Under the pieces are notes generated by a model. The model saw nothing but the letters and a program-made list of their open reading frames with translations, had not been told where the DNA came from and ran no database searches. A stretch of 64,000 bases of DNA. Origin: Podarcis melisellensis. Taxonomy: Eukaryota. The stretch lies in the NCBI GenBank assembly GCA_964234715.1, contig OZ174279.1. One strand, 5' to 3'. The translations under genes were made by a program, and so were the position numbers. Each line of letters opens with the position of its first letter. Within the stretch, counting starts at the first letter, position 1. Positions 11,218-13,996 of the stretch are shown here, piece by piece.

Positions 11218-11258
11218 ATGCGGCAGGCCAGAAGGCTGTCGAATCCTTGTATACAGAG
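11218..11258 (+). CDS. PLEKHA1: PLEKHA1 alternative frame-shifting cassette exon (41 nt)
   Basis: Acceptor gttccag|, donor AG|gtatac; encodes MRQARRLSNPCIQ(R), recalled from alternative mammalian PLEKHA1 isoforms; 41 mod 3 = 2. Confidence 0.85.
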
Positions 11259-11430
11259 GTATACATCAAGAACTGGTGAATGCAGCATGTATGTGGGCTC
11301 TCATGTAAACTTGCCTTCTTACCAGAGGGCTGAAATTCCAAAATACTTGTTAACACCATGTAAAATGATGAGGTCAATCCCATGGCTTCCTCTATTGATT
11401 TATAACCACTGTGAAGTTACTAACTTCTAA
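11218..11430 (+). CDS. PLEKHA1: PLEKHA1 alternative terminal exon (read-through of the cassette donor)
   Basis: Open frame MRQARRLSNPCIQRYTSRTGECSMYVGSHVNLPS...EVTNF* followed by AATAAA at 11478-11483 and 11816-11821. Confidence 0.55.
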   Translation: MRQARRLSNPCIQRYTSRTGECSMYVGSHVNLPSYQRAEIPKYLLTPCKMMRSIPWLPLLIYNHCEVTNF

Positions 11431-12750
11431 AATGCTTCCCATTGGCCATTACGTTTACGATCTCTAAATGCCTTCTAAATAAAATCCATTTTTGAGAATG
11501 GCAAAGATTCACACAGTGCTGAAATCTCTGCTCACATGTGCTTGCTTTACTGAGTACAAAAGCTCTAGTAATAAGTATACATATTTAGGAACTAAAGCTG
11601 ACCTAATTTGCATGAGAGTTCATATTTCCATTTTATCATTTTTGAAAGATAGCTAAGTAAAAGCCACCTTGACCCTCATAGCCAAATATGTGTGTACATT
11701 AAGGAAAAAACCCTGCACTGATTTGCATGGCTTATATGATAGATATGCATGGGGTCATTAGTAAAGATGTAGGGGCTGTTACAGCTTGCAACCTGTATGT
11801 TAATCAAAATAGTGCAATAAATAAAATCTTTTACTTTTTAATCATTAGGCATAACTACATGTGAGTCTTATATCATACGTATGAGTTATATGGATTGTAG
11901 TTTTTAAACTGTTATCCCAGTGCTGGTCCCACTTGGATTCAGATTTTTTTTTTAAAAAAAGAAATGTTTATGTAGTATTCACTTTAGAAAAGAAGCTTAA
12001 TTGTAGGTTCTGCTTTTGTATTGGAATTTACCACTCCAAGTTGAAGCTTGTATGTTTCATATTCCATGTCACAGAGTGTTTCATATTCTGTGTCAAAATG
12101 ATTCCTGTGAATAGTTCGTTACTGGGGTATTTATCATTTCCCCCACTACTCCAAGTATACTGTTTATCATTGTAGAATATTGAATATTCTGATTGTAACA
12201 GACAGTAGAAATAGCTATATTTTAGTGTTGCCCCCACCATCCTAAATTATAGATCCATGAACTGTTACTCATGTCTTGAATAATACAGTAAGGAGTGCAA
12301 AAAATGAAATTGTACCTCACATACACTTGATAAAGGGATTCTGGAATTATTTATTGAATCAGTCCATGCTCACTGGTAGCTTCAACACCAGATTGTTTTA
12401 TTGAGATAGTAGTCTGAAAGAGCTGTTCCAGAATACTGCAAGAAATAATAATAATAGGGCAACCTTTCTGGAACAAGAGAATTGAATGGGAGAACAGTGT
12501 AGTCTTGTGACCTGTCTCCTTTTGTCAGAAAGCCATACTATATGATAGAATGCTGGCCACTTGATTGGCATGCTGCAGGTTCAGTTAAAGCTTTCACTAG
12601 CCATCTGAAAGTCCTACTACGTCATTTTTTAAAAAAAATATACACTAAAAAATATCCTTTGATATCATGAGCAGTCTAGTAAATTTGTCTTGAAAATACT
12701 CCATTTAACTGTATAAATGCTACTAATGTTTTTTGGCAGATACCTTTAAG

Positions 12751-12879
12751 GAGGGGCTAACTTGTAGCCCTCCAGATGTCGTTTAACTCTCATAAGCTTC
12801 AGTCAGCATGTCCAGTAGTCGGGGATGGTGGGAACTGTATTCTAGCAACATCTGGAGGGCCAAAGGTTAGCAGCCCCTG
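12751..12879. mobile_element. Degenerate copy of the short palindromic hAT-type MITE
   Basis: gccctccagatgt...acatctggagggc inverted arms, ends CCCCTG; same family as 18548-18683. Confidence 0.7.
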
Positions 12880-13675
12880 TCTTAAAGTATAATGTTGAAA
12901 CATGGAGTTTAGTAGTGACACAGTCATGTAAATAGTTGTTGATAATATTGTACACAATATAAAGCTTAGCAATTGAGACAGCACTTACTTTTCTAGAGGA
13001 GAACATGTTAGTATTTTATCTTCAGTATGGCTGACTATGGCAATAAAATACATTTAAAATGTAGAAATGACACAAATCATATTTGTTAGAAATTTGGGAG
13101 GAATATTGTCCAGTGGAATTAGTTTATTCCTTAATAGTTTGTAGTTCTATAGAACAAAAAGGTGAAAGAATAAGAAATAGGTGTCTAGTCAACAAAAGTG
13201 TAAATGTTCATTAACTCAGGAAGTGACCTTCAGTGAGGGATTCCATTATGCTTCTTTTTTGAATGTGAATACATTTTGCATGCACTTTTGAATAGTTTAT
13301 TCGAGTTTATTGGAGGACTTCAGGAAGCATTTGTTCACATGTTCTTAAATTATGAAAGTATGCCTTCAAGAATTTTATTTGCATTATATTAAATAAACAA
13401 GTGCAATTCCAAGCTAGTTTGTGCTGATAAACTTAAAATGATGCCATCCTAGACTTTAGGGACCTGACTTGGCCGTTTCAGCTTGCTATCACTGCTGTAA
13501 GCTCAGTCTTAACATTTTGCTGCCTTGGAAAACCACCTGCTTTCTGCTCTTAAGCTTTGCTTTGTTTTCCCCCTTTTGATTTGTTTTTTGTTTTTTTCAG
13601 AGGTATAAGTTTGAAATGCATTACTAGCATGCAATTAATGACCCACTCAATCTGACAAACATTCCTCCTTTACAG

Positions 13676-13892
13676 GAACATTCCAACTGTTCTTCAGAAT
13701 CCACCTGTCCTGCAAAAACAGCCGCAGCCACCTCACATTCCACAACCACTCACAACCCCTCTTTGGTCCAAACCCTTAACACCAAGCCCCTTGTCTTGGA
13801 GAAGCGAAGACTTCACGAATCTTTTACCAAGACCAAGCCAGGGAGCTTCAAGATCCAGGCTGTCCCTTCAAGAGACCCAGCTTCCAAAGTGA
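13676..13892 (+). CDS. PLEKHA1: PLEKHA1 last exon, alternative (+1) frame used after the cassette exon
   Basis: AG+G=Arg, then 71 sense codons from 13677: [74 protein letters not shown] at 13890-13892. Confidence 0.8.
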
Positions 13893-13996
13893 CTCTACAG
13901 GGCCTAATGGAACCTCAAAATAAAAATGGCACTCAGGAACAGGATCCTGGCCCAGTGGATCTGGATGATGCAAGCCTTCCAGTCAGTGATGTGTAA
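13676..13996 (+). CDS. PLEKHA1: PLEKHA1 last coding exon, canonical frame ending in class I PDZ ligand
   Basis: tttacag|GAA...; 107 codons EHSNCSSES...[13 protein letters not shown]; the C-terminus matches TAPP1. Confidence 0.95.

What the first reader, a model, noticed from the sequence alone, without database searches (positions are those of the whole stretch)
11218..13996. Dual-coding last exon of PLEKHA1: a 41-nt cassette switches the C-terminus from a PDZ ligand to an overprinted Pro-rich tail
Seen in sequence: skipping the cassette reads 13676-13996 as 106 aa ending LPVSDV. Including the 41-nt exon shifts the frame, and the same DNA reads 71 stop-free codons ending [13 protein letters not shown] (13892). 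The third frame closes after about 33 codons. The shifted stop is in the last exon, so it should not trigger NMD. Established: the TAPP1 -SDV motif binds PDZ proteins (MUPP1, PTPN13, syntrophins). From memory, mammalian isoforms end in a very similar overprinted peptide (SIPPVLQNP...[27 protein letters not shown]). Inference: both frames have been under selection since the amniote ancestor, and splicing toggles a PI(3,4)P2 sensor between a PDZ-scaffolded form and a form with basophilic kinase sites (RRLS, RSRLS) and a proline-rich segment. The ORF track misses the second frame.
Basis: partly seen in the sequence, partly recalled or inferred. Interest (0 to 1): 0.8.

Follow-up and report, generated by a model that had tools for sequence, protein, structure and literature searches.

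The report
PLEKHA1 two-frame last exon, annotated isoform
The last coding exon of this lizard's PLEKHA1 (TAPP1) gene is read in two frames depending on a small upstream exon; the switch is real and is conserved in every amniote sequence examined, but it is already annotated, and the new point is that selection has preserved mainly the alternative frame.

Summary
The upstream exon ends at 10075 in phase 0. A 41-nt exon (11218-11258) has AG and GT splice sites. The last exon (13676-) reads 106 aa ending LPVSDV in frame a, and 71 codons ending QLPK, then a stop at 13890-92, in frame b.

It gives a 71-nt exon and the same frame shift.

The QLPK isoform is not new. A search with the last-exon peptide alone returned 140 proteins, among them PLEKHA1 isoforms named by NCBI or UniProt in birds, turtles, alligator, a skink, monotremes, marsupials and placentals, in both cassette lengths. 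The human cassette is a studied EMT-, QKI- and TDP-43-regulated exon linked to an Alzheimer GWAS signal.

Ten last-exon DNAs give an asymmetric result. In the overlap, frame b is under purifying selection (dN/dS 0.19). Frame a shows none (apparent 2.15, synonymous rate 7-fold depressed) and is only kept open. After the frame-b stop, selection switches to frame a (0.17).

The parts
9986..10075 (+). Constitutive PLEKHA1 exon at the end of the C-terminal PH domain (...[24 protein letters not shown]). It ends in phase 0, with donor GT at 10076.
   Evidence: Local tblastn with a turtle PLEKHA1 N-part gives 94% identity.
11088..11156 (.). Perfect (TTCT)17 microsatellite, 62 nt upstream of the cassette acceptor. 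It is a pyrimidine-rich tract and a possible splicing-regulator binding site (inference only).
11218..11258 (+). Short cassette of 41 nt (2 mod 3). It encodes 13 codons plus 2 nt and contains RRLSNP. AG is at 11216-17 and GT at 11259-60.
   Evidence: The same form is annotated in Tinamus X2 (P0007), Trachemys X6 (P0053) and echidna (P0111).
11218..11288 (+). Long cassette of 71 nt (also 2 mod 3). It uses a downstream donor, GTATGT, at 11289 and adds 10 residues (YTSRTGECS.) before entering frame b.
   Evidence: The form is annotated in the skink Tiliqua (P0091), alligator (P0082), Columba (P0033), rat and Papio. 58 of 121 proteins carry it. Contig L010 carries the junction ...ATGCAGCAC|GAGCAT.
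13676..13996 (+). Coding part of the last exon in frame a: 106 aa ending in the class I PDZ ligand SDV, plus the stop.
   Evidence: Orthologous fragments P0009-P0026.
13677..13892 (+). Frame b of the same DNA: 71 codons (Pro-rich, PPHIPQPL) ending QLPK, plus a TGA stop.
   Evidence: The stop lies in the same alignment column in all 10 DNAs. dN/dS is 0.19.
13797..13889 (+). The most conserved 31 codons of frame b ([27 protein letters not shown]).
   Evidence: Changes per column are b1 0.19, b2 0.13 and b3 0.69. Frame-b identity is 0.90 between squamates and mammals. dN/dS is 0.10. The peptide is near-invariant in 121 proteins.
13893..13993 (+). Segment coded by frame a only (...[24 protein letters not shown]). 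Codon periodicity switches here to frame a.
   Evidence: Changes per column are a1 0.42, a2 0.41 and a3 0.94. dN/dS is 0.17 and dS is 0.95.
11419..11751 (+). Intronic motif matches downstream of the cassette: ACTAAC (QKI core) at 11419 and TGCATG (RBFOX) at 11609, 11724 and 11746.
   Evidence: These are motif matches only. The window background is about 0.5 per kb for each motif.

Best explanation
This is the 3' end of a squamate PLEKHA1 (TAPP1) gene. It carries the alternative C-terminus found across amniotes. When the penultimate exon is skipped, the last exon is read in frame a: a 72-residue linker, then a conserved end with the PDZ ligand SDV. When the penultimate exon is included, in its 41-nt or 71-nt form (both 2 mod 3), reading moves to frame b. 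This gives a tail of 14 or 24 cassette residues plus 71 residues, with no PDZ ligand. The tail has an RRLSNP site, a Pro-rich stretch and a near-invariant 31-residue end, and it stops at 13890-92 in the same last coding exon. By the exon-junction rule the transcript should therefore escape NMD (inferred). Shown here: the anatomy; the annotation of the isoform across amniotes; and the fact that the 213-nt overlap evolves as a frame-b coding sequence, while frame a is only kept open until its own constrained end. Inferred: that this lizard splices both ways, and what the frame-b tail does. The likely function is a regulated protein-interaction or phosphorylation module that excludes PDZ scaffolding.
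For: Sequence anatomy. Gene identity: (five upstream exons 76-100% identical to turtle PLEKHA1). Isoform breadth: (140 hits to the frame-b peptide; among the 120 listed are named PLEKHA1 isoforms in birds, turtles, alligator, skink, monotremes, marsupials, rodents, primates and cetaceans). Transcript-type evidence in other species: Logan proteins of 293-394 aa on contigs of 1.2-3.6 kb (P0059, P0101, P0107, P0108, P0113, P0136) must be spliced cDNA. L010 carries the junction of the long cassette to the last exon. Selection: the frame-b stop is in the same column in 10 of 10 DNAs and all gaps are 3n. Substitutions peak at b3 in the overlap and at a3 after the frame-b stop. dN/dS for frame b is 0.19 [0.10-0.31]. 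Frame a in the overlap gives 2.15, with dS 0.14 against 0.95 downstream. Frame a downstream gives 0.17. Human literature: the cassette is regulated in EMT and by QKI and TDP-43, and one isoform lacks PVSDV.
Against: Use of either donor in this lizard therefore rests on intact splice sites and on the annotated skink orthologue. No peptide evidence was seen. The DNA set is small (10 sequences, about 60 codons), the species of the Logan contigs are unknown, and NG86 is not designed for overlapping frames. I could not confirm that the human exons called 'exon 15' and 'exon 12' in the papers are this cassette. PMC10140001 assigns PVSDV to its 'L' isoform. If L means exon inclusion, that contradicts the frames seen here.
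Confidence: 0.85

Rival explanations
1. True symmetric dual coding. Both the frame-a linker and the frame-b tail are under amino-acid-level purifying selection throughout 13677-13889.
For: Frame a is open in all 10 DNAs and all indels are 3n. The frame-b synonymous rate in the overlap (0.65) is somewhat below the frame-a synonymous rate downstream (0.95).
Against: The confidence intervals of those two rates overlap ([0.49-0.98] against [0.59-1.31]). Frame-a identity in the overlap (0.60) equals that of the control frame c (0.63), against 0.77 for frame b. The a1 position is the most variable (0.81 changes per column). Frame a must stay open anyway to reach the selected SDV end, and given the frame-b peptide its openness has a chance probability of 0.11-0.15.
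Confidence: 0.15
2. The conservation of the overlap is an RNA-level constraint (splicing enhancers, structure or 3'-end regulation). The frame-b protein would then be an annotation by-product that is never made in useful amounts.
For: No peptide or ribosome evidence was obtained here. Openness in a single species is not significant. Annotation pipelines predict any open spliced form.
Against: RNA-level constraint does not give a 3-nt periodicity with b3 most variable (0.69 against 0.19 and 0.13). It does not give a stop held in one column in 10 of 10 sequences, including a TGA-to-TAG change that keeps it (L012). It does not give a switch of periodicity exactly at that stop.
Confidence: 0.05
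3. In this particular lizard the cassette is not used, or is used only as noise, and the gene makes only the SDV form.
For: No RNA evidence for this species. The first frame-b residue differs from other amniotes (N instead of S).
Against: The acceptor, both donors, the frame-b ORF and its stop are intact. The frame-b tail is 66/71 identical to that of the annotated skink isoform P0091 (my count). A second squamate contig, L006, is also intact.
Confidence: 0.07

Closest known systems
Annotated PLEKHA1/TAPP1 isoforms ending in ...[13 protein letters not shown] (NCBI/UniProt models, e.g. Tiliqua scincoides X3 P0091, Alligator X2 P0082, Trachemys X6/X9 P0053/P0054, Columba X6 P0033, Rattus X6/X8, Papio X3 P0128)
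   Same: The same gene, the same cassette in both lengths, the same frame shift into the last exon and the same stop position. The window's tail is 66/71 identical to the skink tail (my count).
   Different: Nothing structural. The window has N where the others have S at the first frame-b residue, and M instead of T at the long-form junction codon.
The human PLEKHA1 regulated cassette exon: EMT/mesenchymal inclusion (PMC3158048, PMC10140001), QKI-activated 'exon 15' (PMC12408228), and TDP-43 with a flanking GT repeat, with Alzheimer GWAS co-localisation of 'exon 12' skipping (PMC10078293, PMC13174678)
   Same: A small penultimate cassette whose use decides whether the protein ends in PVSDV. 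The window has an intronic repeat next to the exon and a QKI-type motif downstream of it.
   Different: Identity of the human exon with this one is inferred, not shown, because no human sequence was used. The flanking repeat here is (TTCT)17, not (GT)n. None of these papers discusses the frame-b peptide or its conservation.
Alternatively spliced dual-coding regions with different C-termini (Tress et al. 2026 preprint 10.64898/2026.05.28.727796: 537 regions, 105 with selection on both frames; also PMC1868773 and 10.64898/2026.02.24.707805)
   Same: A non-3n upstream splice event, two C-termini from one exon, old age, and tests by dN/dS and depressed dS.
   Different: PLEKHA1 is not named in the text of these papers or in the supplements held. 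Here the signal is asymmetric: the alternative frame carries the constraint and the reference frame does not.

Membership tests
PLEKHA1 (TAPP1) orthologue | C-terminal PH-domain exons with high identity to PLEKHA1 of other amniotes | tested here: met
   exons at 1082-1231, 3139-3204, 6932-7018, 8218-8286 and 9974-10075 match turtle PLEKHA1 residues 159-302 at 76-100% identity.
PLEKHA1 (TAPP1) orthologue | C-terminal class I PDZ ligand (S/T-X-V-COOH; PVSDV) | tested here: met
   frame a ends LPVSDV followed by a stop. The same end is found in 19 of the 20 fragments, 35 that were read (P0009 ends VSYV).
Alternatively spliced dual-coding region | An upstream alternative exon whose length is not a multiple of 3, with usable splice sites | tested here: met
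   41 nt and 71 nt, AG/GT at both forms. Both lengths are annotated in other amniotes.
Alternatively spliced dual-coding region | Both isoforms present as RNA in this organism | not testable with these tools
In other amniotes, spliced transcript contigs and annotated models carry the inclusion form.
Alternatively spliced dual-coding region | Purifying selection on the alternative frame | tested here: met
   dN/dS of frame b is 0.19 [0.10-0.31]; b3 is the most variable position. The stop column is conserved in 10 of 10 DNAs.
Alternatively spliced dual-coding region with selection on both frames | Purifying selection on the reference frame within the overlap | tested here: not met
   frame-a identity equals that of control frame c, and the apparent dN/dS is 2.15. 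The depression of frame-b dS (0.65 against 0.95) is not significant. Only openness and 3n indels are kept.
NMD-insensitive alternative stop | The stop lies in the last exon, or less than about 50 nt upstream of the last junction | tested here: inconclusive
   The frame-b stop at 13890-92 is in the same exon as the canonical stop at 13994-96. The absence of a 3'-UTR intron in this species was not checked with RNA.
Basophilic kinase / 14-3-3 type site in the cassette | R-R-x-S with Pro at +2, phosphorylated in vivo | not tested
   The motif RRLSNP is visible and is invariant in alignment A1.

The most novel reading that the evidence does not exclude
Over the 213-nt overlap, selection has preserved the QLPK frame in all four amniote groups sampled, and not the textbook TAPP1 linker. 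The near-invariant 31-residue end would then be an uncharacterised functional module, mutually exclusive with the PDZ ligand. The canonical linker would be an evolutionary passenger that only has to stay open. If the human EMT and Alzheimer-linked splicing switch is this same cassette, it acts by swapping the PDZ ligand for that module, and inclusion removes PVSDV.
Probability: 0.55. Interest if true: 0.5.

Novelty: already known. Interest (0 to 1): 0.33.

Why it matters
TAPP1 is the standard PI(3,4)P2 adaptor, and work on its C-terminus centres on PDZ partners. The sequences show that a regulated exon replaces that ligand with a tail that is conserved more strongly than the canonical linker it overlaps. 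No paper in the searchable library mentions this tail. A PLEKHA1 cassette that is probably this exon is tied in humans to EMT, to QKI and TDP-43 regulation, and to an Alzheimer GWAS signal. A conserved but uncharacterised protein end is therefore a concrete, testable lead. For genome annotation of this lizard, the finding only means that a second CDS should be added.

Tried and rejected
**RNA reads.** There is therefore no junction evidence for this species. After that, no letters of 11185-11287 were sent to any search tool, and the cassette peptide was never used as a query. Proteins that contain the homologous peptide came back from searches made with last-exon queries only. They were used in align_proteins and structure prediction (A1) and in local parsing, not as search queries or look-ups. 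P0054 was cut before the cassette for the local exon mapping.

**Joined CDS.** The joined coding sequence of this window was not built or searched.

**Structure.** AlphaFold2 of the turtle isoform P0054 with a 37-row alignment gave mean pLDDT 35.6. It is meaningless and no fold search was made.

**Literature on PLEKHA1 as a dual-coding gene.** There is no mention in the main text of three recent papers. There are no occurrences in the supplements held for two of them, and no supplements are held for the third. The frame-b peptide strings occur in no paper.

**Age beyond amniotes.** No amphibian or fish protein is among the best 120 of 140 hits.

**Openness as a statistic.** Rejected as evidence on its own (P about 0.1).

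**Representative library.** The search gave only 6 hits. Three were ORFs that read TGA as W through the frame-b stop (P0001, P0003, P0005). They were useful only as handles to fetch DNA.

**Human contigs.** The four mammalian contigs lack the M-for-T change (EDFMNLL) carried by the one primate sequence read in full, Papio P0128.
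Full report
**1. What is in the sequence**

The window holds the 3' half of a squamate PLEKHA1 gene on the + strand. Five exons (1082-1231, 3139-3204, 6932-7018, 8218-8286, 9974/9986-10075) match residues 159-302 of turtle PLEKHA1 at 76-100% identity.

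- The exon ending at 10075 closes on a complete codon (...GRSAAS) and is followed by GTATGT.
- The proposed cassette, 11218-11258, is 41 nt, with AG at 11216-17 and GT at 11259-60.
- The last coding exon starts at 13676, after a pyrimidine tract and CAG.
- Frame a from 13676 gives 106 aa ending LPVSDV (stop at 13994-96).
- Frame b from 13677 gives 71 codons ending QETQLPK (stop at 13890-92).
- Frame c closes after 33 codons.

Because 41 = 13x3+2, inclusion moves reading from frame a to frame b. I established this by phase arithmetic and by translating each exon by reference. The joined coding sequence of this window was not assembled or searched.

**2.

Thirty nucleotides beyond 11258 lies a better donor, GTATGT at 11289. 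Using it gives a 71-nt exon, also 2 mod 3, and adds ten residues before the same entry into frame b. Other amniotes have both forms annotated. Tinamus isoform X2 and Trachemys X6 carry the short form. Tinamus X1, skink, alligator, pigeon, rat and baboon carry the long one. Among 121 retrieved proteins, 58 have the long form and 40 the short form.

**3. RNA evidence**

The look-up of sequencing runs listed candidate runs, including two bulk RNA-Seq raw-read runs.

All later searches used last-exon sequence only.

Indirect RNA-type evidence exists for other species:
- Logan-derived proteins of 293-394 aa that end in the frame-b tail sit on contigs of only 1.2-3.6 kb. These must be spliced cDNA (P0059, P0101, P0107, P0108, P0113, P0136).
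- The mammalian contig L010 begins inside the long cassette and runs straight into the last exon (...ATGCAGCAC|GAGCAT).
- The ORFs P0017 and P0021 start with the same junction.

**4. How widely the frame-b tail is known**

A profile-free scan of 1.84 billion representatives with the 71-aa frame-b peptide gave six hits. One was a Tinamus PLEKHA1-like fragment. Three were long ORFs on Logan contigs that read the TGA after QLPK as W.

I used one of these ORFs (P0003, residues 125-197, last exon only) as a length-compatible query. It returned 140 proteins. The best 120 include Logan ORFs on short contigs and many entries named as PLEKHA1 isoforms by NCBI or UniProt. The named entries cover birds, turtles, Alligator, the skink Tiliqua, monotremes, marsupials, rodents (including mouse and rat), primates, carnivores and cetaceans.

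The last 31 residues ([28 protein letters not shown]) are almost invariant. No amphibian or fish is among the 120 shown. The remaining 20 could not be listed, so the age beyond amniotes is open.

**5. Which frame is under selection**

I fetched last-exon DNA from 12 Logan contigs by exact-protein look-up. I aligned ten distinct sequences by frame-a codons:
- the window;
- a second squamate, L006;
- a crocodilian-like L007;
- three birds;
- four mammals.

All gaps are multiples of three. Frame b is open from the acceptor to a stop in the same column in all ten: TGA nine times, and TAG once through two changes that keep the stop.

| Region | Minimum changes per column | dN/dS (NG86, between-clade pairs, bootstrap interval) | dS |
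|---|---|---|---|
| Overlap, whole | a1=b3 0.81; a2=b1 0.52; a3=b2 0.37 | frame b 0.19 [0.10-0.31]; frame a 2.15 [1.25-3.83] | frame b 0.65; frame a 0.14 |
| Overlap, last 31 codons | b3 0.69; b1 0.19; b2 0.13 | frame b 0.10 (all pairs) | frame b 0.48 (all pairs) |
| After the frame-b stop | a1 0.42; a2 0.41; a3 0.94 | frame a 0.17 [0.08-0.32] | frame a 0.95 |

- Mean pairwise amino-acid identity in the overlap is 0.60 for frame a, 0.77 for frame b and 0.63 for frame c.
- Between squamates and mammals, the last 31 codons are 0.58, 0.90 and 0.62 identical in frames a, b and c.
- The picture is asymmetric. The overlap evolves as a frame-b coding sequence. Frame a in that stretch is indistinguishable from the control frame and is merely kept open so that translation can reach its own selected end.
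- The mild difference between frame-b dS (0.65) and downstream frame-a dS (0.95) is not significant.
- The high apparent dN/dS of frame a is an artefact. Its 'synonymous' sites are frame-b second positions.

**6. Chance**

In one species, openness is weak evidence. Frame b stays open in 4-19% of synonymous reshuffles of frame a. Frame a stays open in 11-15% of reshuffles of frame b. The case rests on the comparative pattern.

**7. Mechanism**

Shown:
- two mutually exclusive C-termini from one exon;
- the frame-a end is a class I PDZ ligand;
- the frame-b tail lacks it and ends in a conserved peptide.

Established knowledge, as cited in PMC10140001: PVSDV binds syntrophins, MUPP1 and other PDZ proteins, and it affects TAPP1 localisation.

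Inferred:
- Inclusion detaches the PI(3,4)P2 sensor from PDZ scaffolds.
- Inclusion supplies instead an RRLSNP site (basophilic kinase / 14-3-3 type), a PPHIPQP stretch and the conserved end, whose partner is unknown.
- The frame-b stop is in the exon that also holds the canonical stop, so NMD is not expected.
- Regulation may use the downstream ACTAAC at 11419, three TGCATG at 11609-11751 and the upstream (TTCT)17 at 11088-11156. These are motif matches only.

**8. Comparison with the literature**

A human PLEKHA1 cassette is described as:
- a mesenchymal-inclusion exon (PMC3158048);
- a QKI-activated 'exon 15' (PMC12408228);
- skipped more when TDP-43 binds a flanking GT repeat (PMC10078293);
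- co-localised with an Alzheimer GWAS signal (PMC13174678).

PMC10140001 notes that one isoform carries PVSDV and the other does not. It assigns PVSDV to its 'L' form. If L means exon inclusion, that is the reverse of what the frames show, since baboon, rat and mouse inclusion isoforms end in QLPK. I could not resolve this from the text.

That these human exons are the orthologue of 11218-11258/11288 is an inference. No human sequence was used.

The general class is well described. Tress et al. 2026 list 537 dual-coding regions with alternative C-termini, of which 105 show selection on both frames. PLEKHA1 is not named in the text of that paper or two related ones. It does not occur in the supplements held for two of them, and none are held for the third. 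The frame-b peptide occurs in no searchable paper.

**9. Verdict**

- The claim of selection on both frames is only half borne out.
- The feature is already annotated and its human counterpart is studied, so novelty is low.
- The one point of interest is the asymmetry: the so-called alternative tail is the conserved one, and it has no described function.

**10. Dead ends**

An AlphaFold2 model of a turtle isoform had mean pLDDT 35.6 and was discarded. The search of earlier findings returned only this same stretch.

Noticed in passing
window 11259-11430: If neither cassette donor is used, the reading frame stays open through the intron for 57 more codons, to a stop at 11428-30. An AATAAA-like signal lies near 11478 (read by eye). 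This could give a third, truncated C-terminus by intron retention or intronic polyadenylation. Open by chance about 1 time in 10 (my rough figure, not computed).
   Followed up: no
window 11088-11156: Perfect (TTCT)17 microsatellite 62 nt upstream of the cassette acceptor. In humans a (GT)n repeat flanking a PLEKHA1 cassette modulates skipping through TDP-43 (PMC10078293, PMC13174678). A length-polymorphic repeat next to this exon may be a recurring feature.
   Followed up: partly
L001:567-895: One bird contig (Logan ERR12041351) has a 1-nt deletion at position 7 of the last exon. With it, even the skipped form would read straight into the QLPK frame. A near-identical ORF from another run (P0015) is intact. 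An assembly error or a polymorphism is therefore the likeliest explanation.
   Followed up: partly
L012 (mammal contig), alignment columns 223-225: The frame-b stop is TAG instead of TGA. Two substitutions (GTG ACT to GTA GCT) keep a stop in the same column while changing frame a from T to A.
   Followed up: yes
L007 and P0082 (Alligator): The crocodilian frame-b tail ends QLPE rather than QLPK. It is one of the few departures seen at the last five residues; the others are NPLPK (4 proteins) and NHLPK (1).
   Followed up: no
P0001, P0003, P0005 and similar Logan ORFs: These database ORFs read W where the DNA has TGA and run on through the 3' UTR. 'translates_to_query: no' fits gene calling with a TGA=Trp code on vertebrate contigs. 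They are artefacts of gene calling, not read-through proteins.
   Followed up: yes
window 48841-48972 and 63156-63311: Two runs of N.
   Followed up: no
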